Under the pieces are notes generated by a model. The model was not told where the DNA came from, made no database searches, and saw only the letters and a program-made list of their open reading frames with translations. A stretch of 64,000 bases of DNA, from the NCBI RefSeq assembly GCF_031769215.1, contig NW_026783057.1:1-64000 (forward strand). The letters run 5' to 3'. Origin of the DNA: Ylistrum balloti. Taxonomy: Eukaryota. Each line of letters begins with the position of its first letter. Position 1 is the stretch's first letter. Positions 3,400-60,349 of the stretch are shown here, one piece after another. The translations under genes and the position numbers were made by a program.

Positions 3400-3985
3400 G
3401 TCAGATTGCATCAATGTGACCTTTCTGTGTTGTCACATTATGATGTTCTATCTGTCAGAACATATTATGATGACCTGTCTGTCATGACACATTTTGGTGG
3501 CCTTTTGATCTGGACACAATATGATGACCTCATGATCAGGACACAATATGGTGACCTATCTGTCTGGACACATTATGATGACTTATCTGTAAGGACACAA
3601 TATGATGACTTTTTGGTCAGGACAAAATATGATGACCTATCTGTCTGGACACATTATGATGACTTATCTGTAAGGACACAATATGATGACCTTTTGGTCA
3701 GGACACAATATGGTGACCTATCTGTCTGGACACATTATGATGACCTATCTGTCAGGACACAATATGATGACCTATCTGTCAGGACACATTGTGATGACCT
3801 ATCTGTCAGGACACATTATGGTGACCTTTCTGTCAGGACACAATATGATGACCTTTTGATCAGGACACAATACGATGACCAATCTGTCAGGATACATTTT
3901 GGTGACCTATCTGTCAGGATACATTATGGTGACCTATCTGTCAGAACACATTATGGTGACTTATCGGTCAGGATTCATTAATGTG
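3400..3985. repeat. 27-bp minisatellite, about 21 copies
   Basis: Unit GACACAATATGATGACCTATCTGTCAG. The 9-aa periodicity DDLSVRTQY in ORF 3367..3981 reflects it. Confidence 0.9.
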
Positions 3986-21724: not shown

Positions 21725-24700
21725 GTAAGGCGAAGTTGTGTAATTAAACCAGCAAATGAAATGTTTTAAATATTTTATAGACAGTACAACTACAAACATG
21801 TAGACACTATTTAATGAATCCGTTTTATCTCACCGAAAATATAGATCATTATTGGAATCAAATTTCTTTCCTTGACATGATCTGTACACAGACACACAGG
21901 AATATTGGTCAACGAATGCAATTTGAACTCTATACAGTTGTGTTTCGTATCTTGCCTTTTTATGTTGGCTCTTAGTAGCTGCTAAATGAAAAGTTCAACC
22001 AACAATTGCTCATGCATTGCATGAATTTTTTTATTTTGATGGTGTGAGTAGTGTGTGATCTAATCAGATAGAGGAAGTAGATGGTGACCAGAATTACGAT
22101 TCGCATTCGGTCGGTCGTCTATTTGTTGTCAGATAAATCATCTGTTGTTAAAATCCGCAGATTTGTACAAAATATGATTTTAAGTTTTATGGATGAAACA
22201 TGGTAAATCATATGACATTATGCTAATATGATCATAAATTAATTTCAGGCTTTTGAAGTCATGTGTCAATTTATGTATACAGTATCGTTTTATTTCGTGT
22301 GCATTCTCAGGAACTATGATAATTGGAAGCAAAATAACTTTGGGTTTTTATGGGCTACCCAAATACTCTTGAAGATCTGGTAGATAATGGATAACCGAAA
22401 GGTATCAAAAAACGCCTGTGATATGAGGTGAATATTTCCACAACAAAGGATCAGCATATATCTGGTATATGTTCTGAAATGAGCTTTCTTTGTCTCATGA
22501 TAACAGCTATATAAAGGAACCATCTGTAATCTCCATTTTCCCACCCATCATTTGGTATGCTTAATTCTTTTAGTGGTTGGTCACGAGTATCAGTTTTCAT
22601 CACACTTAATTCACATTTTGAGTCCAGATTTTTGTTCACTTAAACCACAAAATATTCATTGGCTTATGTAATTGAATGTTCTTTGAGACCTAAATGCTGT
22701 TGTCAAAAGAATATTGTTTGCAGGGGAATTTATGATAATTCTAAGTTTATTTAATAGTCAGTTTATTCCCTTATTATTGGTGAATGATTTACACCATGAT
22801 ATATGCACTTTGTCTCAAAGTTCAATAGAAACTAATATTGGTTTTAACTCGAAATTCGTCCATATTATTGCTTCACTATACGAAAATATGTTTAGTGCCG
22901 TTCTTCATCAAGGGTTTGTTTCCGATTGGTTCAAAGTTTGCCAGGGCACGCGTCAGGGAAGCATTATCTCCCCTTGGCTGTACACTGTTTTTATTAATGA
23001 TTTACTGAATGAACTGTGCTCATCAAGTTATTCATTTTCTATCCATGGCACCAACGTCACTTGCCCGACGCAAGCCGACGATATCACATTGCTCTCACTT
23101 TGTAAACGTGGCCTGGACAATCTTATGGATGTCTGCTATGCGTACAGCATTAAGTGGCGTTTTATGTATAATGCATCTAAGTCAACTGTCATTGTCTTTA
23201 ATGAAAGCAAAAATGCCTATTCCAAAAACACCCGAAAATGGGTTCTGGGTAATGGGATTGTTTCGGAGTCAGCCAATACGAAACATGTCGGCATTTTTCT
23301 TAACAAGTTCAAAATTGGATCTCCAGATATCCATGACATTGTTAACAGGCTACGCAGTCAATGTTTTGCGCTACTTAACTGCAATTTTTTTGATACTGGT
23401 ATGAACCCCATCACGGGTGTGAAATTATACAAGTCTGTTGTTATGCCAAGATGCCTCTTCGGCTGTGAACTCTGGTTTTCTCTGACAGATTCAGACTGGT
23501 CTCGCATTGAAACTGTACATCACCTTTGTGCAAAACTCATTCAAAGGTTCTCTCGTCGCACACGTTCAGACATCGCTCTAAGCATGTTAGGTCTTACTTC
23601 TATACAAGTCGAGGTCGATTTAGCCAAACTTCGTTTTTTTGCTAGTCTATGTAGACTTGATACTCATTTTTCCGCTAAAAGATTGTTTATGCTTCGTCTT
23701 TTTCATAGTTATTTTGAAGTCTGTAAAGAAGAAAAAGATCTTGTCTCAGATGTTTTGAACATATTTCATGAGCATGATTTACTTGATGTGTTACATACAT
23801 TTTTGCAATCAGGGTACTTTCCATCGAAACAAAAATGGAAATTTTTGACAAAAAATGTCTTATTGCGTAATTACACTACTGACTGGAAACAACGTCTTCT
23901 TCTCAGCAGTGACTTTTCTAGGTTTAACTATTTGCAAATCGAAATTAGGCCTTCAAATATCTGGCTTCTTTCAAAACGTTTCCCATCTTTGGATAACATT
24001 TGTGCTAGCGTTGCTAAATTATGGACTATGTCTCCTTCTTGTCAGCTAATGTGTGCAAAGTGCAGCACGTTTGTAAATGACGCAGTCGCACATTGTTTAT
24101 TAGACTGCTCACATATAGATATTTTGTCTCTACGTGATGATATATTTACCAAAATTGTAAATGATTACCCTGTACATGTTTATATAACTGTTGACCAGGC
24201 TTCTCGTGAGGCTCAGGTAGCCACATTTCTCTGTTCTCCTCCCGAAAATATTCAAGACATTTTCGGAGGATACGATGACCTTTTCTTCCACTTTTTACGT
24301 GATTGTTGTGTGTTCTCCGAAAAGGTGTCTCGCCTTACATTTCAGTAACTTCTTTTGATAAAAGGTTGCTATCATCGACTGCATTGGTGTCATTTGGAAT
24401 GCTTTAGTAATTTAATTGCTCACTTTCTCTTTCTGGATATTTACTTCTTTATTTGATCGACAACTAATCTCACTATCTTGTGTACATGTATCTTAAAATA
24501 TGTTAATATCTTTTTCATTTATTTGTAACTCTTCATCTTTTGGAGGAATAAAGAAATGAATGAATGAATGAATGAATAGAAACATTAGATTGTCTTAGCT
24601 TTCAATATGCTAGCACATCCTTTTGCTGTTAGCATACATTACCGCATTATCACTAAAGCAACAAAGATGTATCAGTTCCACATTCACTGAAATTAGCAAT

Positions 24701-27700: not shown

Positions 27701-30434
27701 GAAAACGAATGGAAGAAACTGCAACGGTAAAGAATATTTTATTTGGAATATATTTCAGTTCAACACATTTCCTGAATACAAGTTTAAATTTCTGTAGATA
27801 ACTAACTCTTCTTATTAGCCCACCATCATCAGATGGTGGGGTATTCAAATCACCCTGCCATCCGTGGTCCGTCCGTCCGTAAACAGTTCTTGTTACCGCT
27901 ATTTCTGGAAAAGTACTGGATGGATCTTTCTCAAATTTCATATGCAGGTTCCCCTTGGTCCCTAGTTGTGCATTGTACCTTTTTTGAACTGATTCGCATT
28001 CAAGATGGCCGACAGGCAGCCATCTTGGATTTTGGAAGTAAAAGTTTGTTACTGCTATTTCTTGGAAAGTACTGGGTGGATCTTTCTTAAATTTCATATG
28101 CAGTTTCCCCTTTGGTTCCAAGTTGTGCATTGTACCTTTTTTTTGACTGATTTGAAATCAAGGTGGCCCACAGGCAGCCATCTTGGATGTCGACAGTAAT
28201 ACAGCACAAGCATATTGTCCATTATCCACCTGTAACTGACTGCTGTCTAATAATACTTTGGGATCTTTTTCAAAAGATATTTGCTAATAGGTGCTAAATA
28301 AAAATATCTTGTGCCATCATTGAGTACATTCAATGAAGACCAGTTCATGAACATTAACAACACCTGTAACAAACAAAAAAAAATAAACAAATCTTCAAGA
28401 ACTGAAAACAGATCCTCAAATGGTGGGCGCCAAGATCCCTCTGGTTGACTATATCATTTTGATCAATGCTCATTGTAAGAATTAGATTTTGAATGCATTT
28501 ATTCATTTAGAAACAGTATGGTAATAATGTATTTTGATCCATATTTTGTGTAGTATTTTTATCTACAAGTAGATGTTACTGGAGCAGTAAGAGAATTATA
28601 ACTTGATTGTAGTAAGTCCTAAGTGATTGAGAGTCCTGAGTGATCATGTGTAGTAAGTCCTGTGTGATCATGTGTTGTAAGTCCTGAGTGATCATGTGTA
28701 GTAAGTCATGAGTGATTGAGTGTAGTAAGTCCTGAGTGATTGAGTTAGTAAGTCCTAAGTGATCTTGTGTAGTAAGTCCTGTGTGATCATGTGTTGTAAG
28801 TCCTGAGTGATCATGTTTAGTAAGTCCTGAGTGATCATGTGTTGTAAGTTCTGAGTGATGGTGTGGAGTAAGTCCTGAGTGATCATGTGTAGTAAGTCCT
28901 TAGTGATTGAGAGTCTTGAGTGATCATGTGTAGTAAGTCCTGATTGATCGTGTGGAGTAAGTCCTGAGTGATCATGTGTAGCAAGTCCTGAGTGACCATG
29001 TGTAGTAAGTCCTGAGTGACCATGTGTAGTAAGTCCTTAGTGATCATGTGTAGTAAGTCCTGAGTGATCATGTGTTGTAAGTCCTAAGTGATGGTGTGGA
29101 GTAAGTCCTGAGTGATCATGTGTAGTAAGTCCTTAGTGATTGAGAGTCTTGAGTGATCATGTGAAGTAAATCCTGAGTGATTGAGTGTAGTAAGTCCTGA
29201 GTGATTGAGTGTAGTAAGTCCTGAGTGATTGAGTGTAGTAAGTCCTGAGTGATCATGTGTAGTAAGTCCAGAGTGATCATGTGTAGTAAATTCCTGAGTG
29301 ATCATGTGTAGTAAATCCTGAGTGATTGAGTGTAGTAAGTCCTGAGTGATCATGTGTAGTAAGTCCTGAATGATTGAGTGTAGTAAGTCCTGAGTGATTG
29401 AGTGTAGTAAGTCCTTAGTGATCATGTGTAGTAAGTCCTGAATGATTGAGTGTAGTAAGTCCTGAGTGATTGAGTGTAGTAAGTCCTGTGTGATGATGTG
29501 TAGTAAGCCCTGAGTGATCATGTGTTGTAAGTCCTGAGTGATCGTGTGGAGTAAGTCCTGTGTGATCATGTGTAGTAAGTCCAGAGTGATCATGTGTAGT
29601 AAATCCTGAGTGATTGAGTGTAGTAAGTCCTGAGTGATTGAGTGTAGTATGTCCTGAGTGATCGTTAAAAAGCTTATTTCTGACACAGATATTACCAATC
29701 ATCCAGTTGTATACCCATATTTACCAAAGGCTTTTGAGATTTACTTTAAAAATAAAAAAGGATCAAAAGATTTTTATCTTTTATTATGTCACAACAATAC
29801 ATTGTCTACAGGTAAACAAAAATGGAACACCATGTTTGAATACAGTGACGAAAAATGGAAACAAATATACAAATTGCCTTTTAAAGTAACAAAAAATACC
29901 AAATTACATTGGTTACAATATAGGATAAATCAGCATATTTTAACTACTAACACTTACCTATCAAAAATAGGGATAGAAAATAGTTCTTCCTGTTTCCAGT
30001 GTGGAACAGAACCAGAAACAATTATTCATGCCCTATGGGAATGTGAAAAAGTACAAAGATTTTTACAGAATTTTGAATATCTTGTGGACAGTCTTTCAAT
30101 TCCTTTTGCATATAATAAAGAATCCTTTTTATTTGGAATATTGAATAGGAACAATATCAATTTTGTAGTGGACAACACAATAATATTGATAATGAAACAG
30201 TACATCTATAGCTCTAGATGTTTAAAAACGGAATTATCTATTCATGGTCTCAAGAATCTAATTAAGGAAACATATTGTGTCCAGAAATTCATAGCTACTG
30301 GAAAAGGGAATCTGGTACTGGATGAGTTTAAAAAAGTATGGAGGAAATGGGAAAAGTTAATTGAGATAACTTAGCATCATAAATTTGTGTTTCTAGGATG
30401 TGGTTATACATTCCCAGGCAGCTCCCTCTTAATT

Positions 30435-40469: not shown

Positions 40470-43400
40470 TTATAATCCATGTTCTTTTCGTTTTTCTTTG
40501 CCTTTTAATATAGCCTGTTTGAAAAGGCTACAATACAGTTCAATGGATGTTAATGTATCATCATTTCCTGGAACAGGGTAAGTGATGATCCTTGGATCCG
40601 AGTTGGTATCCACTATTCCTATCGTAGGAATCATCATCTTCGCACTTTCAACGATGGCAGTATGTTGTTCAAATACAGTGTTTGATGTACTGAGGAAAAT
40701 ACAAGTGTCAGGCAGACGTGTGACAGAGCCAAACTGCTGTATAGCATTGGTAAAGGTTCCGCCCCGCCAGTATCTACAGTGACTGTACTCGCCTGCTTCC
40801 TCTGCTGTCTTCTCCACCAAGGGCATACTCAATGCCTGTCTTGTAAGGAATAAAATGACACCTCCTCTATATGCTATGTGTGCTAGAAAATTTAATGCTA
40901 TTTCCATGTTATCGACTGTCTGTTTAAGATCCAAAATATCAACTCCCATCCTGCTACCATATATGTAGGGCACCATGTATTCATTACGAACTCCTGATTT
41001 ATGACCATAATGAACACCTGCTTCAAAAAGTTCCTCCACTTTTATCAATTTTTTCACATCAAAGTAGTCATCATGCTTTAATGGATTGTCAATAATTTTG
41101 TCTGAAAAAAAAATAGTAAATTTGAAACAAGAAATCAAAAAAAAAAACAAAAAAACACCAGTACTTAATACATCAAATAAAATCAATTGGAACCATACAA
41201 AGATTTTTTTTATCTTTTGGACAGAAACATGCCTCAGTAAGTTTTCATAACAAGTACGGTATATTGCATTGAATGCAAATAAGTTTGAGATGTGTTTCAT
41301 CTTTGCTACAGCCAAGGTCATTTGTAGATGACGGAATCATTTATGGACACTTTTAGAGTGCCATCACACTGTCCTAACTGCTCATTCAAAGCTGAATACA
41401 AAGCAGAGAGCAGTAAGTACATGCCTAAATCAGGGGACAGAACTCCTACTCTTCTTTGATTTAGAAAGTGGATGCTCATTATCAACACAAAAGACACAAA
41501 GCAAGGTATAGCCTTGTTATGCTTTAAGGTTCAATCAGAGAAAACAAAAGATCCCTGAGGATTCAGGGAGTACTTCTCCAGAAATGACAATAACAAGAAT
41601 TATTAATGAACAGAGGGACAGATGATGGACTGTGACAAAGGAAATTTTGAACAGCCCACCATCTGATGATTCATGTAAAGGAAACAGTGATTACATTCTG
41701 TACATGCATGCCCTATCTCTATATTCAAGGCAGGAATGAATTTGAGATTCTCTTGATGATGTCAACATTTATTCATGCTGTCTGTAATGTCATGACATGT
41801 TTTCTTCAATATTCATTCAGCAATAAACCTATGTCCATGCATCTCATAATCCTTTAGTAAGTGTATCAACTCATTCAGAATTAGTATGTTAGCTCTGTTC
41901 TCTTGACTTACACAGCACAAATAAGGTACATATCAATATACTATTTTTGCAACTTCATGGATATATATAGATGTACCACAATTATATAGCCCAAGTTTTT
42001 TCGGACATACACCAAACATCTCTTTACAGGGCTCAACAGCAGATTCTTCACTATTCCAACAGACATGTACAGCATGCAGGAATCTCTGTTACAATGTCTA
42101 ACTTCTGGTATTGAGGCAAGAGAAAACTCAGGTTGAGAGAAAACTCAGGTTAATTACTCAACTATTAAGTGATATTCATCACATGATTAAAAAATTACTG
42201 TTGTGATTACAAACATTGTACCAAATATCTGCCACTATGATAATATACATTCTTTCAACATGTAGGATTTTTCATTCACATATAATACATTGTATCAGGT
42301 AATTCTCAACCTATCAAATTTCTTAGAGGTTGACCAGAAACAAAATTTTAAAATTCAGAGCATTTTAAAAATACACTGTAAATCAATTAATAACATAAAT
42401 TACATATAGACACAAGTAGATACACACTTCCTCATGGTTTATTTGGAGAAAGGAAACACAAACCAGCCATTCTTCCATTAACATTATCACTATTAGTGAC
42501 AACAACAGCTTAAAAATTTCAGCGTGACACCCTTAAACCCCATCCCTGTAACCTTGTCAAGATCATTTTGTTACCTTGGTTATCAGCTTCTTGTGTCAGT
42601 GGAATCTGTTGCTTTACTTGGTTGGCACAGAACAGTCTGCGACTGCCCTGGCAAGTAATTGGAGAGTCCCATGAAACTTTGTTTGACCTCCTCCTCACGA
42701 GAGACTGTACTGGACAACTTGCAGCTTTGGGGTCTAGTAGACAAAATCAAAAGTCATGACACTTACCCTGCTAAATATGTACATATATAATAATCTTCTG
42801 GGTAATGTTCAGTACTTGAAATCTTAAAGGCCCCTCCAGCAGAAAAGTAACCTATTAATAACTAGGTACAATCACATAACCATTAATTTGCACAAACATA
42901 ATGTACATAAATATTCTATTTGTTTTCTCATGTAAATCAAAGAATTGGGAGCTCTATTATAAATGTTAATTGTTAATGTACAATGAAAATAGGAGGAATT
43001 TTATCCGATACATATTCATGAATCTTAGAACCATATTATGTAAAGCCAGTGCCAGACGCTAAATGCTCTATGTGAATTGCTTTATACCAAATATTGAATG
43101 CAAAATGCTTCATGTAAACTGCTTTAATTTTGATTTCAAGATGACCTCAAGTCATAAGAAAACATCTGTCTCTTTGCACGTAATAAATGTTAAGATAACT
43201 TATGTTGCCATACTGACAATATATAAATGTTAGATAACTTATGTTGCCATACTGACAATATATAATTGTGAAGAGTTGTTTCCATTTATTATGTTTGGGA
43301 AATTCTACATAATTGAATACTTAATGCTTTATTTTGAATCCGTACTGTGATATGCTTCATGCAAAATGTTTACAATGTAAAGAACTTTTTTATGAAGCAG

Positions 43401-46637: not shown

Positions 46638-49600
46638 TCACTTTTCCGAGAAAGGCATATCTGAATTCCCCGGACTCTTTTCGGACTTTCTCTTCAGGCA
46701 CATCGGTCGTTTGTTTAATGACACATCACGTATCAGATTGATAAACAAACTGTATTCTTCCGTGTGGTTATACACGTTAGCAGAAAGACGGACATAAAGG
46801 TTGTCAAGGACACAGAATATTTGTACTTGTATATCGTGTTCATAAAATAGATCGTCCATCAGACGGTAAGCTTCGGCCTGTAACATAACATAAACATCAA
46901 AACAATACGCTGTCTAATACATGGTTCACTTCGGCATTTCACATAACATGAACACAAAAAAGCTGTCCAACACACGGTTCACTTCGGCATGTATCATAAC
47001 ATAAACATCAAAACAATAAGCTGTCCAACACACGGTTCACCTCGGCCTGTAACATAACACAAACATCAAAACAATAAGCTGTCCAACACACGGTTCACTT
47101 CGGCCTGTGACATAAACATCAAAACAAGAAGCTGTCCAACACACAGTTCACTTCGGCCTGTGACATAACATAAACATCCAAACAATAAGCTATCCAACAC
47201 ACGGGACACTTCGGCCTGTGACATAAACATCAAAACAATAAGCTGTCCAACACACGGTTCAATTCGGCCTTTAACATAACATAAACATCAAAACAATAAG
47301 CTATCTAACACACGGTTCACTCTGGCCTGTATCATAACATAAACATCAAAACAATAAGCTGTCCAACACACGGTTCACTTCGGCCTGTAACATAACATAA
47401 ACATCAAAACAATAAGCTGTCCAACACACGGTTCACTTCGGCCTGTAACATAACATAAACATCAAAACAATAAGCTGTCCAACACACGGTTCACTTTGGC
47501 CTGTGACATAACATAAACATCAAAACAATAAGCTGTCCAACACACTGTTCACTTCGGCCTGTAACATAACATAAACATCAAAACAATAAGCTGTCCAACA
47601 CACGGTTCACTTCGGCCTGTGACATAACATAAACATCCAAACTATAAGCTATCCAACACACGGTTCACTTCGGCCTGTAACATAACATAAACATCAAAAC
47701 AATAAGCTGTCCAACACACGGTTCACTTCGGCCTGTGACATAAACATCAAAACAATAAGCTGTCCAACACACGGTTCACTTCGGCCTGTAACATAACATA
47801 AACATCAAAACAATAAGTTGTCCAACACACGGTTCACTTCGGCCTGTAACATAACATAAACATCAAAACAATAAGCTGTCCAACACACGGTTCACTTCGG
47901 CCTGTGACATAAACATCAAAACAAGAAGCTGTCCAACACACAGTTCACTTCGGCCTGTGACATAACATAAACATCCAAACAATAAGCTATCCAACACACG
48001 GGACACTTCGGCCTGTGACATAAACATCAAAACAATAAGCTGTCCAACACACGGTTCAATTCGGCCTTTAACATAACATAAACATCAAAACAATAAGCTA
48101 TCTAACACACGGTTCACTCTGGCCTGTATCATAACATAAACATCAAAACAATACGCTGTCTAATACATGGTTTACTTCGGCCTGTAACATAACATAAATA
48201 TCAAAACAATACGCTCTCTAATACATTGTTCACTTCGGCATTTAACATAACATGAACACAAAAAAGCTGTCCAACACACGGTTCACTTCGGCATGTATCA
48301 TAACATAAACATCAAAACAATAAGCTGTCCAACACACGGTTCACCTCGGCCTGTAACATAACATAAACATCAAAACAATAAGTTGTCCAACACACGGTTC
48401 ACTTCGGCCTGTAACATAACATAAACATCAAAACAATAAGCTGTCCAACACACGGTTCACTTCGGCCTGTGACATAAACATCAAAACAATAAGCTGTCGA
48501 ACACACGGTTCACTTCGGCCTGTAACATAACATAAACATCAAAACAATAAGCTGTCTGACACACGGTTCACTTCGGCCTGTAACATAACATAAACATCAA
48601 AACAATAAGCTGTCCAACATACGGTTCACTTCGGCCTGTAACATAACATAAACATCAAAACAATAAGCTGTCCAACATACGGTTCCCTTCGGCCTGTAAC
48701 ATAACATAAACATCAAAACAATAAGCTGTCCAACACACGGTTCACTTCGGCCTGTAACATAACATAAACATCAAAACAATAAGCTGTCCAACACACGGTT
48801 CACTTCGGCCTGTGACATAAACATCAAAACATTAAGCTGTCCAACACACGGTTCACTTCGTCCTGTAACATAACATAAACATCAAAAGAATAAGCTGTCT
48901 GACACACGGTTCACTGCGGCCTGTGACATAAACATCAAAACAATAAGCTGTCCAACACACGGTTCACTTCGGTCTGTGACATAAACATCAAAACAATAAG
49001 CTGTCCAACACGCGGTTCACTTCGGCCTGTGACATAAACATCAAAACAATAAGCTATCCAACACACGGTTCACTTCGGCCTGTTACATAACATAAACATC
49101 AAAACAATAAGCTATCTGACACACGGTTTACCTAGGCCAGTGTCATAACATAAACATCAAAACAATAAGCTGTCCAACACACGGTTCACTTCGGCCTGTA
49201 ACATAACATAAACATCAAAACAATAAACTGTCCAACACACGGTTCACTTCGGCCTGTGACATAAACATCAAAACAAGAAGCTGTCCAACACACGGTTCAC
49301 TTCGGCCTGTGACATAAACATCAAAACAAGAAGCTGTCCAACAAACGGTTCACTTCGGCCTGTGACATAACGTAAACATCCAAACTATAAGCTATCCAAC
49401 ACACGGTTCACTTCGGCCTGTAACATAACATAAACATCAAAACAATAAGCTGTCCAACACACGGTTCACTTCGGCCTGTGACATAAACATCAAAACAAGA
49501 AGCTGTCCAACAAACGGTTCACTTCGGCCTGTGACATAACGTAAACATCCAAACTATAAGCTATCCAACACACGGTTCACTTCGGCCTGTAACATAACAT

Positions 49601-52600
49601 AAACATCAAAACAATAAGCTGTCCAACACACGGTTCACTTCGGCCTGTGACATAAACATCAAAACAAGAAGCTGTCCAACAAACGGTTCACTTCGGCCTG
49701 TGACATAACGTAAACATCCAAACTATAAGCTATCCAACACACGGTTCACTTCGGCCTGTAACATAACATAAACATCAAAACAATAAGCTGTCCAACACAC
49801 GGTTCACTTCGGTCTGTGACATAAACATCAAAACAATAAGCTGTCCAACGCACGGTTCACTTCGGCCTGTAACATAACATAAACATCAAAACAATAAGCT
49901 GTCCAACACACGGTTCACTTCGGCCTGTAACATAACACAAACATCAAAACAATCAGCTGTCCAACACACGGTTCACTTCGGCCTGTAACATAACATGAAC
50001 ATAAAAAGCTATCCAACACACGGTTCACCTCGGCCTGTAACATAACATGAACATCAAAACAATAAGCTGTCCAACACACGGTTCACTTCGGCCTGTGACA
50101 CAACATAAACATCAAAACAATAAGCTGTCTATTAGGCCTTCAAAACAACATAAAATACATCAGTTCTAAACTCAACAATAAGTCTTACATCAAACCTTCA
50201 ATCTCAACAAGTCGTGCAACAGGACGAACATATGACACAGTACTAACTACATATGAAGAAAGCACAGCTGTAGTAACCAACACATACGTACCGTCGTTAC
50301 GTCGTATAGGTCCATATGCGGCAATCTGATCATTTTCATACACGGTGCTTCCATGTCCCGAGGGATAGGTAATTTGCCAGTACCCCATTCCGTCACCATC
50401 CTGTCAGTTACGAGGTCCAATAGAGAGGAGTTGTACCCAGTTATGGCAGTCTGGCAAAAGCAAAGGAAATTTCGATTATATGCTAAATATATAGTGTAAC
50501 AGTAGAAATTTTGTCAAGATGGAATGGAATATTTTTTTTCAATCCTACCATTCCTCCGAGGTCCTCGTAGAATTTAAGAGCGTCTGTCACAGTTACATAA
50601 GCACAATCGTCACGTGTTCCCTGCATGAAGAATTCCATGGTAAACTCTTTCAGATAATACCACGAGGTGACTAATGGCCGAATCCAGGCGTGGTGTTCTC
50701 TCCTCACATACAAGAGAGCGCATCCTCTTGGTGTATACGCCCACTTATGTAGATTACCTGAAAATTTAATAATATTGACACATACATCATAGCTGCAATT
50801 AGTCCGAAGGATTCCGACTATCTATCCGCGAATTTATTTTCGTCTTGGTCGCAATCGATATTCAGAATTCAGAATACAAAAAAAACATTGGCTCGGGCCG
50901 GAGTTGGAATCCAGGCAGTTTTTTAAATTTAGTTTATAACAGCATGATAGTTACAAATCATATATCAATTGAAATGTAAAACCTTTTTCAGCGAACTTGC
51001 ATATGTGTTATGGCAAGCAATTTAATGACGAAAGCTGAGAATATCTCTAGATAGATTTGTTCTTGTCAACCTACCAAGAGTAAGCTCTCGCGAGATTGGC
51101 GGAAATATTAGGTTTACAAAAATAAGTCTAGAGAAAATCCGAACAGATTTTTCCCAATATGGCGGTCATTGTGGTGATAAACTGAACATATTACTATTTA
51201 AAGGGAAAAAATGGGCATGACTGGTTTTATATAAGCCTGGTTTATGGATTGATGTTCACATGGATACGTTTCCATAAAGTTATGTTTACATGTCAGAGGA
51301 GAATGTCTGCAGCGCAGTATTTGGTGGTGAAATGAACCCATAGTATCTTGTAACTTAGACACTTTATAAGGATAATCTGACTTACTGACCTGTGTAAAAG
51401 TCGGGATCCAGGTCCTTTAAATCGATAGGTACTTGCCCAGGCGCATGCGCACCATCTATCATGGACATGACATCATGTTCTCGACACAACTTGATGATTT
51501 TCTTAATAGGCATGACAACGGCGGTGGAGCTTGTAATGTGATCTATGGCGACAAAAATAATTTTTAAAGTCTCAAAACCTCAAATTCAAAATGACTGTAA
51601 ATACAAGGACACTTTTCGGACACGAAATGTAATCAAATGCTAGTATTCTCGGAAGAAATTGATGTATACATGTGAAATTTCGCAAACGAACTTTGTCCCG
51701 GAAGGATAAGAAAATTGGACTTACCTATAACTGCCAGCCGCACGTGCGGATGTGATGAGAGGAACTGCCTGTACTGTTCCACTACGTCATCCTCCGAGAT
51801 TATAGGGTAGTTGATGTCCATTTTGTAATACTGTGATCCTGAAATTGTCACGTCATTTAGACCATTCTAAGGTAACCATGTCCTTTGTGTTCGTACTTAC
51901 ATGTTGAAATTTCGTTTAATTTTATAGAGTTTCACATGGAAAATGCTTCCTTATTGGAAGTCGTTATGAATAGGTTTATAGCTCGTTGTAAAAATGTATT
52001 GTTTGAAACTAATTAAATAATGTTGATAATTTAATTATGACATCCACTTTTTCTTTAAAGAAAGATTTATTTTCCGTATTGTCAAAGAAGTATTCTGAAT
52101 ATATGACACCGCTAACGATACCACTATTGGCTGCTTTCGCGTGTTCGCACGTAAACTGAATTGCCGGATATGTGTTGTCTGTCGCTAGGATAGCATCATT
52201 CTCTTTAAAGTTTATCGACTTCAGTACAGTATTGACCCCTGAAAAACATATATACGTATGTCATAAATATTTAGGAACGTGTGATAATACAAAGCCCATT
52301 GTGAAGAAAATTATGACCTTTTAATTCTAGCAATTACACATCAGTAAATATTTTACAATAACCTTTGAGCTGATGTTATAGAGAATCAACACAAAAACAA
52401 TGATCACAACGATTGTATTGTGACCTTTGACCTGTTTTGGATGATGAGTAATTACTCTCACCTGTAGTTGCGTTCTGTACAAGGACAACATCTTCTGAAT
52501 CGGCGTTCACAAACGCGGCAATAGCGTCCCTCCCTTCCTTCCATTTACCGAGGTTGTTCCGACGGAACCAGTCGTCTGGGTGATCATCCATCTTGTCAAT

Positions 52601-53705
52601 GTAGCTAAACATCCACATCAAATTACAAATTAATCGCTTAAAACCACATTTACGTTTGACTGAAATAATTCCTAGAATTCAAGAGGAGACAAATTCAAAT
52701 ATACTTCTATCTCATAATATATGTGACAGAGTAAAATAGGGTCGGTAGGTTGGGATTTCTTTTTAAACAATGTTTGCTTGCTCTTAAAACTGACCTCCCA
52801 AGTAAGGCATATTGATTACGAAAAGGTTTATACCCATGTGTTTGGTATAAAGGTAGGTATAATTATCGCATATGTATATTATAAAATGTTTAATCCGAAG
52901 GGTTCCGACTATCTATCCGCGATTATTTTTGTCTTGGTCGCGGGCGGTAGTCAAAATTCCTTCCTTAAGAAAAACGGGGTTCTAAGGCTCGGGCCTGGGT
53001 CGGCATTCAGGCAATATTTGATATAGTTTACAACAGCGTGATGTTACAGATCATACATCTATTGAAATATAAAACACTTTTCTAAATTGTACTAACTTGC
53101 ATATGTGTGAAAAAATGGATTTCAATTAATTTTCCCAACAATTTTACTTTCTGACATGGTTGCCAATACACGGATTCTCTCTAGACTTGATTCTGCAAAT
53201 CTACCGTTTCCGCCAATCTCGCGAAAGTTATGTTACTATGTTTCAGAAGACAATTCTAGAGAGATTTCGTATAGTGGTAGCCATTGTAGATGTTAGTTTA
53301 GTATTCCCAGAAAGGTGTCGAGAGAACGTACCACATCTATCTGTATACATAAGTTTCTAAGTGCTTGACCTCATTCTACTAGTGTTTCTGGAAATCGCAG
53401 AAAAAGTGGCAAAATCAACACGGAGAGTAAATCTGTTTTTGCCGAATGTTGAAAAAAATAGGGTCGGTAGTAAAATAAAAGAGACAGTCGGGAAACCGGA
53501 AACATGGATATTTGGTTTTTCTTTGTTAACTTAAAGAATAGTTGATTGAGATAAAAAAAATTTACCGTTTCTGAATGTCTTTCACACGTTTCGGTACCGT
53601 TCCGAATGAGCCGTGGTTTAAAAACATTGAGCCTTTTCTCATACAGAACTCTTTTTCTCTCATCTCTTGACCAAACGGAGGAAGTGTCATCTCCTCAGAT
53701 CCCAT
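46638..53705 (-). CDS. PLP-dependent class-V aminotransferase-fold C-S lyase (hercynylcysteine sulfoxide lyase Egt2 / plant L-cysteine desulfhydrase / isopenicillin N epimerase-like), 424 aa, 8 exons
   Basis: Exons (minus): 53566-53705, 52462-52604, 52122-52238, 51725-51838, 51390-51542, 50549-50757, 50292-50450, 46638-46877. GT-AG, consistent phases, 1275 nt. Motifs: LNHGSFG, NATTG, DHITS, IDGAHAPG, GNLHKW (PLP lysine), GTRD, VRLSANVYN. Confidence 0.9.
46878..50130 (-). repeat. 58/53-bp tandem array (about 57 copies) filling intron 7 of the lyase gene; the unit is the splice acceptor plus exon-8 start
   Basis: Sense-strand unit GCCGAAGTGAACCGTGTGTTGGACAGCTTATTGTTTTGATGTTTATGTTATGTTACAG. A 53-bp variant lacks one ATGTT. 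Confidence 0.95.
50803..51170 (+). mobile_element. Interspersed repeat copy 1 (probable non-autonomous DNA element) in lyase intron 5
   Basis: Shares TCCGAAGG(A/G)TTCCGACTATCTATCCGCGA...GGCTCGGGCC...AACTTGCATATGTG with 52894-53110. Confidence 0.55.
52894..53510 (+). mobile_element. Interspersed repeat copy 2 in lyase intron 1
   Basis: Diverged homolog of 50803-51170, ending near GGGTCGGTAG...GTCGGGAAACCGGAAAC. Confidence 0.5.
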
Positions 53706-54355
53706 GGCTGGACAAGATTGAACATAAAACAAAAAACAAGTTAAAATATGTACAATAATATCATCGAGTTAATGCCACCATTTTTGGTGGAGGTGATTGG
53801 GGGTGGAGGGGGGGAGGGCTATTGTTGACTCCAGAGGTGAGGGAGCAAATTTAAAAGATAAGTTTTAATAAATACACAAATATTTTAAAACATTGGATGG
53901 ATGCACAGACCACAGAAAGACACGCACGTTTTACAACAATAGTCGTTTAGTTCATAATATTACAGAATTGTTTTCAAAAACTTAAACAAAGTCACGTAAA
54001 ATAAGTGATGAGCCGTACATGTATATTAAAAAAAACGATTTTCTCTTCCTTAAGCACGCAGTGTTACATAAATATCTAGTTGTTATATTACTTCCGGATG
54101 TTTATCATATAAACAGACATAACATTAAAACACGCATGGACGCTGTAATCATAAGGATTAAGAATAGAAATAGACGTTTGTAAGCCAGCGAAGCTCAAAT
54201 ATGACATAGGTGTAGGGACATACATTTGACATTTGAAATGCTGCAGTAGGTTAGGTAATAGAAAATACTCCGGACATTCTGAAAAGACGCTTGTTTATTA
54301 TAGACACGTAAAGATTGTCTCTTAAACCCGCCATGTTAACGATTTTGTATACAAT

Positions 54356-55052: not shown

Positions 55053-57707
55053 TTAAATCGCAGGAATCCAGGTGTCGCTATCGTGATGCTCCACCTGTCG
55101 TTGATACCATTGAAGGTCGCTATATTGATTCTGGCTGTCTCTGTTGGAGTCCAGCTTTATTTCTCCGTCTCGTGTGAAGTCTGACGCCTTCAGTTCAATG
55201 TTAGGTGGGACCGCGTCTACTGCCAGGGAATCTATGTGTTTGAGCCAGGTATTTAGTCTGTTGAGAGGTGATCTGGCGATAGCGCTGGTCTGTAGAGTAG
55301 ACAGATCACTGGAGTAATTCATCGGGTACTGCACTTCTGAAAAAGGAGTTAAGAACAAAAATTATACATGACTTTGAAAAGAAAATAGTAAGCAAACATG
55401 CGTGTAAATCTAACTTGAAATTAGTAAAAGTTGGACAATTTGAAAAATGGGACTTTATGCTTCGAGAATCACTGACGAGTCCTAGAAAGACGAAACCTCT
55501 GTGTGATACAGTTTAATTAATAATTTTGCTCTACTGTAATGATTTAACAATTGTAAAATGTGCTAATACTTGTGTGTCTTCCGTACAGTTTCACTTTTGT
55601 GACAAATCACCAGAATAATCTTCAGAAGAACATAATAAAACGTAGACAGAATATGTTAAAAACTGTAGTAAATAGACATCGATTTTGGCTTGTATTTTAT
55701 TGGATCGCATCTCGTTTTTCTAGGAAACCTACCATTTATTGTATTCTGCACATCGTCTCCAGAACCCGAGAGAGAACCGGAAGTTGTTTCATTGTCACTA
55801 AGCCCAGAATCCTGATTTCTGCCACCACATCCTCTGCGGATATTTCTTATTCTTCGACTCCTGGTTTTGCTTCGTTTATTACGGAACCACGAGTGTATCA
55901 GCCTGGTTTCAATGCCTGTAAGAGTACTCAGTTTCTGCCGGATGTGACGTGGAGGTCGTGGGTTACTCCTATACGCATGTTCTAATATATCCCTCTGATT
56001 ATGATTCAGGTTTAACGCGAGTCGTTTACTTGTGTGGCCGTCACCAGTGGAGGTTATGTTTCGGTCCTCTGACGCTATAAATAAACAGAAACATAACCGT
56101 AATAATATTTAATAGTAATAAATAGTAACTTTGGTTAGGACCTATACATAAAATGGAGAGTTTCGTACTTAATTCAACTAGATGGAAAAAATATACGTAC
56201 AAGAAAAAAATGTGTAAAAACAAGACCGCTATCTTCCTCGTTCTTGTGTGTTAAGATGTCAGTAACTTTTGCATCAACGTTTGCATTTTTTACCTTGAGT
56301 TGTGATTTTTTGGAGGTCCTGGTCGCATAAAAGCTTATCGTCTTCCCGAATGTAGAATTTATCACCGGTCTGTAATCCAACGCGACACACTGCGCACGCA
56401 AAACAGGTCTCGTGATAGATGTTGTTGCCTGCCATTCGAACGGACTCCTCTGGAGCTACCATACCAGAGCATCCAGAACACATTCCGCCAAACCTCCTGT
56501 AGATGAAAATTACACAACGGTGATTTAAAACTCAAAAATTGACATATCTTTCATATATGTTTTACGTTATTTCAAGGAATTTAAATGGGTTAACCCGTCA
56601 GTACAACTAAGTAAGACACACTATAGCTCATTAGTAAACTGATGTCAGATTTAATGAAAACTACGGGAAAAAGCTGTGACACTAATCTACTGGGGTCAAC
56701 TGTGTTGGTCACACTTGTTATGACCTAGAGAGCTCACCTGTAAAAGTCAGTTTGACAATAGATGTCGGTCCCGTCAGAAAAACAAACATTCGACACTTCC
56801 ACGCCACACGCCGTACATCGAACGCATGCGCTGTGCATTACTTCATCTTGCACGCGAACCACTAGTCTGTCGAAGATTGCGTTTCCACATCTACAGCAAG
56901 TTGGGGCGCTTACTGTGGAAGGAAATAAAACATTATTTCGATTTATTGTAAACAACATAAAGTCTATTTTTTGTCATCAATCTACTCTATACGATCCAGA
57001 AATAAAGACATAAAAGGGTCAAATGTAATACTACGGACAGCTTTAGGCATTAATCTTTGTGGTCATACGAAATGGCATTATATCATATAGACTAAAACAT
57101 AAATAAAGAACATTGACAGGTAAACATCTGAAATAATGGTGTATACATCCTACAAGCCAAATTTAAAATATTAGTGGGAAACACACAGCTTCAGAATACA
57201 GTACATATTTAGTAATATTTTAAAATCTGTTTACCATTCAAAGTTAGCAAACTGATTTTGTATGTTATCGAAAATCCCCTTTTTGAATTTCTGCTGGTTT
57301 GGATTTTCTTAAATTTCTTTCAGAATATCGACAAGTTTGGTCCGTTTGGAGAGTCTAAGATGGGTAAAACAGCAGTGTGTTTCTGGTAATTATTGTTAGT
57401 CTTCAACATATCCTGTTTCTATTGCTAAATCAGTGACATATCCTGAATTTTGGTAAAGGTGGGGGCCAAAAACATCTTTCCGTCTTTTCAATAAAATGAA
57501 TAAGCAATGAAAACATTACATCGTTCGCATTCATTTCTCACCTCCATTCCAGTTGTTTCCGACCATGGAAAGTTGCTCCTGAGTTTGGGGGACAGCCAGG
57601 TGCTCGTGGGGTATGGCGACTGGCGTGAGATGATGCACCCTGGGGTTTGGGACTGATGTAGATGAGTGTAGCCTTTCCAGTATATCGGGTGATGTACATG
57701 TGCCCAT
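55053..57707 (-). CDS. Divergent LIM-homeodomain transcription factor (Lhx3/4 - Lhx1/5 group), about 389 aa, 5 exons
   Basis: Exons (minus): 57542-57707 (start less certain), 56738-56912 (LIM1), 56294-56496 (LIM2), 55733-56074 (homeodomain; not in the ORF track), 55053-55336. Phases 1/2/1/1, 1170 nt. All zinc ligands of both LIMs are intact, with the DFYR|RFG junction. Homeodomain: SKRLALNLNHNQRDILEHAYRSNPRPPRHIRQKLSTLTGIETRLIHSWFRNKRSKTRSRR. Confidence 0.88.
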
Positions 57708-60349
57708 CTTACTTATAGTATGGGTAAAAATATAAACGACAGAGAAATCACGCGTCTTCGACACTTGTTTAAATTTTTCCAAAATTCGAGTAGTCCAGGA
57801 GTAAAACTTGTCATCCGTCGTTTACGAGATGTGAGTGAGTTATGAAGATTCTCAGAGTGACCTGGCTATTTATCGTGACCTCGTAGACCAAACATTCCAG
57901 GTAGAGCCGTATAAATTAAACATATACAGGTATGTAAAGTTAATCAGTTCCTATTATACCATGATTCCGGATAGATTAACGGGGTCATTGTTCAGGTGAA
58001 CGCGTGAATGTACTTTAGGGTAGATCCGCGACGCCCAGATTGCAGGTAGCATGTCTCAGAAAGGGGTCGGGATTCACCTACAGACGGGTAAATGAGAAAA
58101 TACGACGGACGTCTGGGGTCAGGTTTTAACAGGTGATCAACCCCCTCGAGTGACTTGCTTGTAGCTGGGGTCAACATTACAGACTTACAGGTAATTCGGC
58201 TGACCAGACGGGTAAATATTGTCTAGGATAACGGTAGTTTTAAAAGAATCCAACCTTTGTTTACTTATATTGTTTACAAACTTTCTATAGATATTGATAA
58301 TGGCGTTGCCTGTTTTTACTCGTTTACTACCGACGTAAATGAAATTCGGTCAGGCAGTCAGACGGTTCAGTGAGAGATAAGACCCAGACAGTGAGATCAT
58401 ACGAAGGACTGTTATATATAATATCTGTTACAATCTTGTGTACTTCTTGATCATAAGAATTCAGAAGAGTTACAGAAAAAGAGGAGGGGCGGGAGGATAT
58501 CACACAAATTTGAACAATATTGAAAGAAAGAAACTTACAAGGACCCATACACACAGATACACACGGACAAACACATACCTACACATGTTCACATAATAAC
58601 TTGTTATACAGTTATACATGAATCACCTTTCAATAACATATTAACACATTATTTGTGTGGTTCATTTCACAACTTTAGGCACATAACGATATAATACAGA
58701 TATTCTTTCGCTCGGTTAGCAATGATTTATGTATTAACACGAAAGCGCGAAAACACGGTGTAAAAAGTCATGCACAACACTATCATAGACAATGCTTATG
58801 TATGATCCAAGTTACAACAGGCCACTGTGTGGTAGGATTCTAGTCACAATGACTATGGAGTTAATTCTAAAATCCCCCAGTTATTTTGGCGATAAATCAT
58901 AGGCGATGATATCACCACAAAGACCATGAAGTCAATGATAATTATGACCCTTTTCCTCTAAATTCAACTTCTTTTAGCAAATCATTGATAAAGGTCCACC
59001 TTGTAAAATTCCACGTCTAATAATTACCTTGTCTGACTTAAGACCATTAAGCACAACATTACTGGTTAAACGATAACACATTTGTTTCTTAATATTCCAT
59101 ATTTTCCCTTTTCAATGCCCATATTATAAAGTTTATAAAACAGACTTTCTTGCCATACCGAGTCGAATGCTTTATTACTATGTAGAAAAGCAACAAAGAC
59201 ATCAGATCCATTTTCTGGGTTACAGTTAACACTTTCTTGTAAATTTAAGAATTACAAAAGCTGTTTGGTAATATACATGTTTATAGAATCGGGCTTAGAC
59301 GAGTAGACAACAGTGTCTCACAGGAGTTTATATAACACCCCTGTAACTATTTAGGTCGTCATTTGGTTAACGATTACCTTTATACAACGTGGTTATCGTG
59401 CCAAGTTCCCAGGATTTCAGAATATATTCATAATTAACAATCAGATTGAAAAAAAATAAGTATTATGTGTAGCTAATGAATTGTTACAGTACTTACCATA
59501 TTCAAACACAATGATCGTCTGGACCACCAGACATTCTTGTCTTAAGATTTTTACATATTTCAGAAACCTCCTTAAAAATGAATTCCTTTTCTATAAACTC
59601 TCTACAATCAAAGTTGTACCGTAACAGCGTAACTCGAAGTTCCAATAAATAAACTGAAAATTTGATTTAAATAAATGATTAATAAATAGTTTATCTAGAG
59701 TGTATCTCGACATATAGGTGTCCCTGACTGCGATTACTACAAAACGTTGGTATTACTTACGGACGTTGGCCGTAGTAATACTAATACGATACTGTACATC
59801 TAACGGGTTTGGATATTTGACAGCGATCATTCTACGTCATGAGCTGGGTAAGGGTAAGACAAGGACAATACATTTGACGGTTTTTAATATCGAACTTTTT
59901 TGTTATGACTCCTTAACATGAAAGCAATGAATATTGATTGCTTCACGTATCGGTTGGTAATCAGAAATACCTTCTTCATTTTAAATATGAACTTAATATT
60001 ACTTTTTCTCCCTAACCTTAGTTTTGTTTACTTCTGTTTATTTGCATTAAAGTCAGAAGTAAAAAGTCCACTGGATTATATTATAATTTTCATCTGAAGA
60101 TCTGCGACCTGTTAAATGGAAAAATGTTGTACGCCTGAAAGGTAATAAATACCGCTCCAGGGACTGACAAATTACATCTAATTATATCATAAACAATTAT
60201 GATTTAGTCAATTAGGCGTAGCATTCTATCACTATTGACACCCAATATTATCTTATTTCTGGGCTGATCAACTTCAATCAAAGTGCAGTCCACTCCCTTT
60301 TGGTAACGGTTCGGTGATGGCCACCTTGCAATTTAAATGAACTTTTTAT

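What the first reader, a model, noticed from the sequence alone, without database searches (positions are those of the whole stretch)
55733..56074. LIM-homeobox gene with rewired DNA-contact residues (A5, S47, R50)
Seen: the 60-aa homeodomain aligns without gaps to the Lhx3/4 and Lhx1/5 pattern (L16, Y20, PRP at 24-26, RHIR at 28-31, W48, F49, N51, R53). However, it has Ala at 5, Ser at 47 and Arg at 50. Established: LIM-class homeodomains have Arg5, Val47 and Gln50, and positions 5, 47, 50 and 54 determine base recognition. Both LIM domains keep all zinc ligands, so cofactor (Ldb1/Chip) binding may be retained. Inference: a lineage-specific duplicate with a new binding specificity, or a weak DNA binder that competes for Ldb like LMO proteins. 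Known spiralian homeobox novelties are mostly TALE and PRD class, so a LIM-class case would be notable.
Basis: partly seen in the sequence, partly recalled or inferred. Interest (0 to 1): 0.7.

Follow-up and report, generated by a model that had tools for sequence, protein, structure and literature searches.

The report
Scallop Lhx3-like gene, rewired homeodomain
This is an intact, selectively maintained scallop gene for a LIM-homeodomain regulator derived from the Lhx3/4 family. Its DNA-reading residues (positions 5, 47 and 50) were replaced in the scallop ancestor and then conserved, so it probably reads a different DNA site than any other known LIM-homeodomain protein.

Summary
Window 55733-56074 (minus strand) is exactly the homeodomain (HD) exon of a five-exon LIM-LIM-HD gene. 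The gene equals NCBI model XP_060085048.1, 'LIM/homeobox protein Lhx3-like' of the scallop Ylistrum balloti.

**Residues.** The HD has A5, S47 and R50. Both LIM domains keep all eight zinc ligands.

**Not a pseudogene.**
- Syntenic orthologues exist in Pecten, Mizuhopecten and Argopecten.
- Whole-gene dN/dS is 0.11-0.14; the recognition helix is 0-0.12.
- S47 and R50 are invariant. Position 5 is A, A, S or T, never R.
- A spliced Argopecten transcript contig uses the same exon junctions.

**Origin.**
- The LIM domains and the HD are closest to Lhx3/4.
- Family members in the ark clam Tegillarca and the file clam Acesta share a previously undescribed conserved C-terminal domain. They keep canonical R5, V/I47 and Q50, so the rewiring arose on the scallop stem.
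- The oyster Lhx3/4 is canonical, which argues that this family is an old paralogue within pteriomorph bivalves.

**Not tested.**
- DNA specificity.
- Ldb/Islet binding.
- Whether scallops also keep a canonical Lhx3/4.

**Verdict.** I found no paper describing the family. It is a new variant of a known kind and moderately interesting.

The parts
57799..58079 (-). Probable 5' untranslated exon
   Evidence: blastn to nucleotides 29-321 of the Argopecten transcript contig L001, 76% identity. Boundaries are approximate.
57542..57707 (-). Coding exon 1. ATG at 57705-57707; poorly conserved N-terminus of 55 residues; donor GGAG|gtgaga, phase 1.
   Evidence: Sequence read. tblastn of P0001 residues 1-55 at 100%. 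Identical to the N-terminus of P0001.
56738..56912 (-). LIM1 exon. Acceptor cacag|TA; donor AG|gtgagc.
   Evidence: Pfam LIM 4.1e-9. All 8 zinc ligands present. dN/dS 0.03-0.14.
56294..56496 (-). LIM2 exon. Acceptor tacag|G; donor caag|gtaaaa.
   Evidence: Pfam LIM 5e-15. All 8 ligands present. dN/dS 0.05-0.12. The LIM1-LIM2 tandem aligns without gaps to the Lhx3 LIM domains, E 6e-32.
55733..56074 (-). Homeodomain exon (the finding): linker, the whole HD with no intron, and a basic/serine-rich linker.
   Evidence: Junctions confirmed by P0001 and by the Argopecten mRNA alignment ending exactly at 55733.
55851..56030 (-). The 60-residue homeodomain proper. A5 at 56016-56018, S47 at 55890-55892, R50 at 55881-55883.
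   Evidence: AlphaFold2 predicts three helices with pLDDT 77-89. dN/dS 0.05-0.17; helix 3 0-0.12.
55053..55336 (-). C-terminal exon. Acceptor tttttcag|AA, phase 1; stop codon at 55053-55055. Encodes a conserved domain of unknown function with core WLKxxDSLAVDAVPPNxELKxSDF..GEI...QY...W(I/L)P(A/G)(I/L)-end.
   Evidence: Identical to the C-terminus of P0001. Conserved in four scallop genera. dN/dS 0.04-0.10; core 0.01-0.04. Found in Acesta L002 and Tegillarca L006. No Pfam or PDB relative.

Best explanation
A functional transcription-factor gene, a fast-evolving offshoot of the Lhx3/4 (Lim3/CEH-14) family found so far only in pteriomorph bivalves (scallops, file clam, ark clam). It has two Lhx3/4-type LIM domains, a homeodomain encoded on one exon, and a family-specific conserved C-terminal domain. 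On the branch leading to scallops the HD was remodelled, including the base-contacting positions: R5 to A/S/T, V/I47 to S, Q50 to R. It has been held almost unchanged since. Shown: gene structure, orthology, purifying selection, polarity of the changes, and Lhx3/4 affinity. Inferred: the protein still binds DNA, because N51, R53, K55, R57, W48, F49, K2 and R3 are kept and helix 3 is frozen. Also inferred: it prefers different bases flanking the AT core and has a weaker minor-groove anchor, while its LIM domains still recruit Ldb and possibly Islet. On this reading it directs the usual LIM-HD cofactor complex to a new set of sites.
For: The gene model equals XP_060085048.1. Orthologues of 76-79% identity exist in Pecten, Mizuhopecten and Argopecten. 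They share the same five-exon structure and the same downstream Aminotran_5 neighbour. A spliced 1684-nt Argopecten contig carries the whole coding sequence with the same junctions. Whole-gene dN/dS is 0.11-0.14 at dS 0.8-1.2; HD 0.05-0.17; helix 3 0-0.12. S47 is kept through three synonymous codons and R50 is invariant. Acesta (L002, IMG Ga0072491, PMC8755941) and Tegillarca (KAJ8300052.1) members share the C-terminal domain and intron phases but have R5, V/I47 and Q50. Lhx3/4 affinity: HD best PDB hit is Lhx4 at 2.4e-11. The LIM tandem hits Lhx3/Lhx4 at 6e-32, against LMO4 at 1e-19 and Isl1 at 6e-18. The nearest LIM-bearing representatives and profile hits are all Lhx3/4. Precedent: HOXD13 Q50R keeps DNA binding but changes the dinucleotide flanking the AT core, to sites unlike any known factor's (PMC3847778).
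Against: No binding, interaction or expression data exist for the Ylistrum protein. R5, the main minor-groove contact, is lost, and position 5 varies among scallops, so affinity may be low. The substitutions on the scallop stem are not significantly concentrated at DNA-contact positions (11 of 21 contact versus 9 of 25 other positions, p = 0.21), so the change looks like general fast evolution and not a targeted switch. In the tree the family falls outside the canonical Lhx3/4 clade. That tree had only an Islet outgroup, and the scallop stem is 2.0 substitutions per site, so family assignment rests mainly on similarity ranking.
Confidence: 0.55

Rival explanations
1. LMO-like competitor. The HD no longer binds DNA usefully, and the protein acts mainly through its LIM domains, titrating Ldb and Islet away from canonical LIM-HD factors.
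For: Loss of R5, with position 5 drifting (A/A/S/T). S47 replaces the hydrophobic contact to the TAAT core. The LIM domains are well conserved (dN/dS 0.03-0.14) and clearly Lhx3/4-like.
Against: Helix 3 is the most constrained part of the HD (dN/dS 0-0.12 with dS about 1). N51, R53, K55, R57, K2 and R3 are all kept, which a mere spacer would not need. HOXD13 Q50R still binds DNA. The HD is predicted to fold normally.
Confidence: 0.2
2. Not a paralogue. It is the scallops' only Lhx3/4 orthologue, which diverged drastically, so the ancestral Lhx3/4 role is carried out with an R50 homeodomain or has been lost.
For: NCBI names the models 'Lhx3-like' or 'ceh-14-like'. Lhx3/4 is the nearest family. 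I could not show that a canonical Lhx3/4 exists in any scallop, ark clam or file clam genome. There is a weak resemblance to the Lhx3/4 C-terminal motif SSDLST..SP..WL..D.
Against: The oyster Lhx3/4 HD is fully canonical: by direct reading, 5 differences from amphioxus in 57 positions (Paps et al. 2015 supplement). The derived family traits are the C-terminal extension and divergent LIM and HD sequence. They are shared by Arcida, Limida and Pectinida, which on the accepted pteriomorph tree (my knowledge) bracket the oysters. Both gene types must then have coexisted in the pteriomorph ancestor. The tree puts the family outside a canonical clade that includes a sea anemone.
Confidence: 0.15
3. 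A decaying or non-functional duplicate (pseudogene in the making).
For: Unusual residues at normally invariant positions.
Against: Intact reading frames and identical splice structure in four genera. dN/dS 0.11-0.14 at near-saturated dS. A spliced transcript in Argopecten.
Confidence: 0.03

Closest known systems
Lhx3/Lhx4 (Drosophila Lim3, C. elegans CEH-14) LIM-homeodomain factors
   Same: Two N-terminal LIM domains align without gaps to the Lhx3/Lhx4 LIM domains (E 6e-32). The HD is closest to Lhx4, with the AY..SP/NP(K/R)P.RH(V/I)R signature. The intron between LIM1 and LIM2 lies just before the RFG motif that opens LIM2. There is a possible remnant of the C-terminal SSDLST..SP..WL..D motif.
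   Different: A/S/T5, S47, R50, K52 and S54 instead of R5, V47, Q50, R52 and A54. About 40% HD identity to canonical members, which are themselves about 90% identical across bilaterians. An extra conserved C-terminal domain of about 70 residues. It falls outside the canonical clade in the tree.
Non-scallop members of the same bivalve family (Tegillarca granosa KAJ8300052.1; Acesta excavata metagenome contig L002; P0080)
   Same: The same LIM-LIM-HD-C-terminal-domain architecture, intron phases and single-exon HD. Shared motifs include CFSDGxDxYC, LQTGDKxYxRxDxKLxC, WFxNKR(S/A)K, and DSLAVDAVPPNxEL with a W(I/L)P(A/G)(I/L) end.
   Different: They keep R5, V/I47 and Q50. The scallop HD is only 50% identical to the Acesta HD.
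HOXD13 Q317R (Q50R) human limb-malformation allele
   Same: Arginine at HD position 50. It is experimentally shown to keep DNA binding, to alter the dinucleotide next to the AT-rich core, and not to mimic K50 factors (PMC3847778).
   Different: A single disease substitution in an Abd-B-type HD with R5 intact. The scallop HD combines R50 with S47 and loss of R5, and is a naturally fixed, selected state.
LMO (LIM-only) proteins
   Same: A tandem LIM module of the nuclear LIM-HD/LMO type that could bind the Ldb LIM-interaction domain (LMO4 E 1e-19).
   Different: LMO proteins have no homeodomain. Here the HD is intact and under strong purifying selection.
Lophotrochozoan 'novel' homeobox clades of Paps et al. 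2015 (PMC5322547)
   Same: A lineage-restricted, fast-evolving homeobox clade in molluscs.
   Different: That survey lists no novel LIM-class clade in molluscs, only one in neodermatan flatworms, and gives oysters 8 ordinary LIM genes. No HD of this type is in the part of their alignment held here, which is cut after the first Pinctada entries.

Membership tests
LIM-class homeobox (LIM-HD) proteins | Two tandem N-terminal LIM zinc-finger domains with complete zinc ligands | tested here: met
   Pfam LIM 4.1e-9 and 5e-15. C-x2-C, H-x2-C-x2-C-x2-C and C-x2-D are read in both domains.
LIM-class homeobox (LIM-HD) proteins | 60-residue homeodomain C-terminal to the LIM domains with fold-defining residues (L16, F/Y20, W48, F49, N51, R53) | tested here: met
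   Pfam Homeodomain 7.8e-11. Residues read. Three helices with pLDDT 77-89.
LIM-class homeobox (LIM-HD) proteins | Class-typical DNA-contact residues R5, V47 and Q50 | tested here: not met
   A5, S47 and R50 in Ylistrum. A/S/T5, S47 and R50 in all four scallops. Canonical state: 7 of 7 fly LIM HDs have R5 and Q50, and 28 of 28 true LIM-linked HDs in my hit set (after setting aside 7 false pattern matches) have V47 and Q50.
Lhx3/4 family | LIM domains and HD more similar to Lhx3/4 than to other LIM-HD or LMO groups | tested here: met
   PDB ranking: Lhx3/Lhx4 6e-32, LMO4 1e-19, Isl1 6e-18. HD: Lhx4 2.4e-11, Isl1 7.7e-9, Lhx9 7e-6, Lmx1a 3e-5. The nearest LIM-bearing database proteins are all Lhx3/4. 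Lhx1/5, Lhx2/9 and Lhx6/8 LIM domains are not represented in the PDB comparison.
Lhx3/4 family | Monophyly with canonical Lhx3/4 in a phylogeny including all six bilaterian LIM-HD families | tested here: inconclusive
   In the LIM+HD tree the family (85/81) sits beside, not inside, the canonical Lhx3/4 clade (89/88). Islet was the only outgroup and the scallop stem is 2.0 substitutions per site.
Lhx3/4 family | Lhx3/4-type C-terminal motif (...SSDLS...SP.SWL.E.D near the C-terminus) | tested here: inconclusive
   Scallops have SSDLST...RSP...TWLKHID at the start of the C-terminal exon. hhalign pairs the two motifs, but P = 0.11.
Lhx3/4 family | Binding of Ldb1/Chip and the Islet LIM-interaction peptides; TAATTA-type DNA site | not testable with these tools
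   Needs co-IP or yeast two-hybrid, and PBM or SELEX.
LMO-like LIM-only decoy | No functional DNA-binding domain | tested here: not met
   The HD is intact in all orthologues. HD dN/dS is 0.05-0.17 and helix 3 is 0-0.12. This shows constraint, not binding itself.
Pseudogene | Disrupted frame or relaxed selection (dN/dS near 1), no transcript | tested here: not met
   Intact in four genera. dN/dS 0.11-0.14. Spliced Argopecten transcript contig.

The most novel reading that the evidence does not exclude
Scallops carry a LIM-homeodomain factor with a DNA-recognition code (small residue at 5, S47, R50) used by no other LIM-HD protein. It was fixed after a burst of change on the scallop stem. It keeps Lhx3/4-type LIM domains and has a family-specific C-terminal domain. 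It would therefore bring the Ldb/Islet cofactor machinery to a new class of cis-elements. That would be a natural change of specificity within the otherwise highly conserved LIM code, comparable in kind to the Q50K origin of Bicoid.
Probability: 0.3. Interest if true: 0.7.

Novelty: new variant of a known kind. Interest (0 to 1): 0.5.

Why it matters
LIM-homeodomain proteins are among the most conserved developmental regulators. Their R5/V47/Q50 recognition residues are essentially invariant from cnidarians to vertebrates, and the 'LIM code' for neuron identity relies on it.

This system offers a naturally occurring, selectively maintained Q50R/V47S/R5-loss version. Close relatives in file clam and ark clam still have the ancestral residues. 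That gives a ready-made way to study how homeodomain specificity evolves through ancestral-versus-derived swaps.

It also adds a LIM-class case to the list of mollusc-specific homeobox novelties, which so far are mostly TALE and PRD. The conserved C-terminal domain has no known relatives and is a second unexplained feature.

Tried and rejected
- **Word search with the HD exon alone:** blank. This is uninformative, because full-length relatives (about 389 aa) exceed the length window.
- **Sequencing-run tool:** There is no RNA evidence for Ylistrum itself.
- **Metagenome scan with the C-terminal-domain profile:** no confirmed locus.
- **Rfam on 54-59 kb:** nothing.
- **C-terminal domain against Pfam and PDB:** nothing.
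- **AlphaFold2 of the whole protein with a 9-row alignment:** only the LIM domains and the HD are confident. The C-terminus has pLDDT below 50, so no fold search was run and no intramolecular contact can be claimed.
- **Link to the Lhx3/4 C-terminal motif by hhalign:** not significant, P = 0.11.
- **Enrichment of scallop-stem substitutions at DNA-contact positions:** not significant, p = 0.21.
- **Search of the Paps et al. HD alignment for family-like sequences:** none. The file is truncated in storage.
- **Literature searches for scallop Lhx3, 'Lhx3-like' or 'ceh-14-like':** nothing relevant.
- **Canonical Lhx3/4 in scallops:** contig L007 (P0134) has an HD nearly identical to the oyster's, but its species cannot be identified.
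rejected in favour of Lhx3/4.
- **Pseudogene reading:** rejected.
- **Exon joining:** Exons were searched by reference, and full-length analyses used the database protein P0001, which is identical to the model.
Full report
**What is at the coordinates.**
- The finding's interval, 55733-56074, is on the minus strand. It is exactly one exon, with acceptor tatag|CG at 56074 and donor AATG|gtaggt at 55733.
- Translated in frame from 56072, it encodes a linker, a complete 60-residue homeodomain (window 55851-56030) and a basic/serine-rich tail.
- The homeodomain has the fold-defining L16, Y20, W48, F49, N51 and R53, and the LIM-HD-like N23-P-R-P-P-R-H-I-R31 stretch.
- It has Ala at 5, Ser at 47 and Arg at 50, plus K52 and S54.
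- Pfam scores it as Homeodomain at 7.8e-11.
- Upstream on the same strand are a LIM2 exon (56294-56496, Pfam LIM 5e-15) and a LIM1 exon (56738-56912, 4.1e-9). Each has the full set of eight zinc ligands.
- All splice phases fit with a first coding exon (57542-57707) and a C-terminal exon (55053-55336).
- The window has no N.

**The gene model is public and the organism is a scallop.**
- An exhaustive HMMER search of cluster representatives with the HD exon returned a 389-residue protein, P0001. It is residue-for-residue the five-exon model.
- P0001 is XP_060085048.1, 'LIM/homeobox protein Lhx3-like' of Ylistrum balloti.
Exons were searched by reference, and full-length work used P0001.

**Orthologues and selection.**
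- P0001 has full-length relatives of 76-79% identity in Pecten maximus, Mizuhopecten yessoensis and Argopecten. The Argopecten protein is 99% identical to A. irradians XP_069121017.1, 'ceh-14-like'.
- All have the same five-exon structure with junctions at homologous residues.
- In Pecten and Mizuhopecten the next gene downstream is a class-V aminotransferase, as in the window.
- The Argopecten sequence comes from a 1684-nt Logan contig that carries the whole coding sequence uninterrupted. It aligns to the window exon by exon, ending exactly at 55733 and resuming at about 55337. That makes it a spliced transcript. It also reveals a probable 5' UTR exon at about 57799-58079.
- Nei-Gojobori dN/dS between the four genera is 0.11-0.14 overall at dS 0.8-1.2. 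By region it is 0.03-0.14 for LIM1, 0.05-0.12 for LIM2, 0.05-0.17 for the HD, 0-0.12 for helix 3 and 0.04-0.10 for the C-terminal exon.
- S47 is encoded by TCG, TCT and TCA in different genera. R50 is invariant. Position 5 is A, A, S or T, never R.
- The gene is therefore functional, and its unusual recognition helix is the selected state.

**Which family.**
- The HD's best solved relative is Lhx4 (2.4e-11), ahead of Isl1, Lhx9 and Lmx1a.
- The LIM tandem aligns without gaps to the Lhx3 and Lhx4 LIM domains (6e-32). LMO4 (1e-19), Isl1 (6e-18) and LMO2 are far behind.
- Every LIM-bearing protein among the nearest representatives is of Lhx3/4 type apart from one Islet. The same holds for the profile word search beyond the family itself, whose list ends in a single weak filamin-binding LIM protein without a homeodomain.
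- The affinity is therefore Lhx3/4, not Lhx1/5.
- In a LIM+HD tree the family does not nest inside canonical Lhx3/4. It sits beside a canonical clade that includes a sea anemone. The stem to scallops is very long (2.0 substitutions per site), against 0.04-0.16 on the terminal branches to the four scallops.
- With only an Islet outgroup available, formal placement is inconclusive.

**A wider bivalve family, and the polarity of the change.**
- Three other sequences belong with the scallop genes:
  - KAJ8300052.1 of the ark clam Tegillarca granosa (partial model);
  - an anonymous relative, P0080;
  - P0012, on a 1.66-kb contig of IMG metagenome Ga0072491. This is the gill metagenome of the file clam Acesta excavata (PMC8755941), so the contig is presumably host DNA.
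- The Acesta contig carries a LIM2 exon, a single-exon HD and a C-terminal exon with the same intron phases.
- The Tegillarca locus has the C-terminal exon just downstream of the truncated model.
- The shared C-terminal domain has the core WLKxxDSLAVDAVPPNxELKxSDF..GEI...QY and ends in W(I/L)P(A/G)(I/L). It has no Pfam or PDB relative. It is under the strongest constraint in the protein, with core dN/dS 0.01-0.04.
- All three non-scallop members keep R5, V or I at 47, and Q50. The R5 loss, V/I47S and Q50R therefore arose on the scallop stem.
- Those substitutions are part of a broad remodelling: 20 of 46 polarisable HD positions changed. They are not significantly concentrated at DNA-contact positions (p = 0.21).

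**Paralogue or sole orthologue.**
- The oyster Lhx3/4 homeodomain in the Paps et al. (2015) supplement is fully canonical. By direct reading it differs from amphioxus at 5 of 57 positions.
- No family-like HD occurs in the stored part of that alignment.
- That survey reports eight ordinary LIM-class genes in oyster and no novel LIM clade in molluscs.
- On the accepted pteriomorph phylogeny (my knowledge, not tested here), Arcida, Limida and Pectinida bracket the oysters. The divergent family and a canonical Lhx3/4 should then both have been present in the pteriomorph ancestor, which makes this an old paralogue.
- I could not search scallop genomes for a canonical copy. The 'sole, highly derived orthologue' reading keeps some weight.

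**How it probably works.**
- Kept: the residues that hold a homeodomain on the DNA backbone, the invariant N51 adenine contact, and K2/R3 of the N-terminal arm. The domain is predicted to fold normally (pLDDT 77-89).
- Changed: the residues that select bases.
- In Drosophila all seven LIM HDs have R5 and Q50. R50 occurs only in the CERS HD and one ZF-class HD (PMC4901127).
- The one experimental precedent I found is HOXD13 Q50R. It retains substantial DNA binding, changes the dinucleotide flanking the AT core, does not mimic K50 factors, and occupies sites unlike those of known factors (PMC3847778).
- By analogy (inference), the scallop protein most likely still binds DNA with an altered flank preference and a weaker minor-groove anchor. 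Its Lhx3/4-type LIM domains would still engage Ldb and possibly Islet.
- The alternative is that it acts chiefly as an LMO-like competitor. This is less likely, because the recognition helix is the most constrained part of the HD, but it is not excluded.

**Novelty and limits.**
- The proteins exist as automatic predictions named 'Lhx3-like' or 'ceh-14-like'.
- I found no paper describing the family, its C-terminal domain or the R50 state.
- It is a new variant of a known kind.

Noticed in passing
window 55053-55336 (-); L002:1221-1469; L006:14285-14521: A roughly 70-residue C-terminal domain (WLKxxDSLAVDAVPPNxELKxSDF..GEI...QY...W(I/L)P(A/G)(I/L)-end). It is conserved from ark clam to scallops, has no Pfam or PDB relative, and is the most constrained part of the protein (core dN/dS 0.01-0.04). 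Its function is unknown. AlphaFold2 gives it low confidence.
   Followed up: partly
window 51385-53732 (-): Exons of a class-V aminotransferase gene (Pfam Aminotran_5 2.9e-6 on one exon) lie immediately downstream of the LIM-HD gene on the same strand. The same neighbour is present in Pecten maximus and Mizuhopecten yessoensis, so the synteny is conserved.
   Followed up: partly
window 46638-50291: Another reader of this window noted an intronic array of about 57 copies of a splice acceptor plus exon start (s1-258820). The composition profile shows a strong negative GC skew at 46-50 kb. Not examined here.
   Followed up: no
window 40470-41321 (-): A single-exon 283-residue ORF with a Ribosomal_S2 domain (Pfam 4.1e-42), probably the mitochondrial ribosomal protein S2 gene.
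   Followed up: partly
window 22714-24348 (+) and 29658-30374 (+): Retrotransposon remnants: a reverse-transcriptase ORF (RVT_1 8e-10) and a zf-RVT ORF (1.4e-7).
   Followed up: partly
window 3367-3981 (+), 9671-9976 (+), 15613-15930 (+), 29084-29698 (-): Long ORFs made of short tandem repeats (for example YDDLSVRTQ and ITQDLLHS units). They are most likely satellite or minisatellite DNA read through, not genes.
   Followed up: no
proteins P0005 and P0015: The S47+R50 pair (..SWFRN..) also occurs in individual homeodomains of two unnamed multi-homeobox proteins among the search hits. Other R50 homeodomains (NWFRN type) occur in a further group of unnamed proteins. R50 is therefore rare but not unique outside the LIM class.
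   Followed up: no
L007:1126-2310: An unidentified Logan contig carries a canonical Lhx3/4-type gene (HD nearly identical to the oyster's) with LIM1, LIM2 and HD exons separated by introns of only about 200 nt. No family-type C-terminal exon lies within 2 kb downstream.
   Followed up: partly
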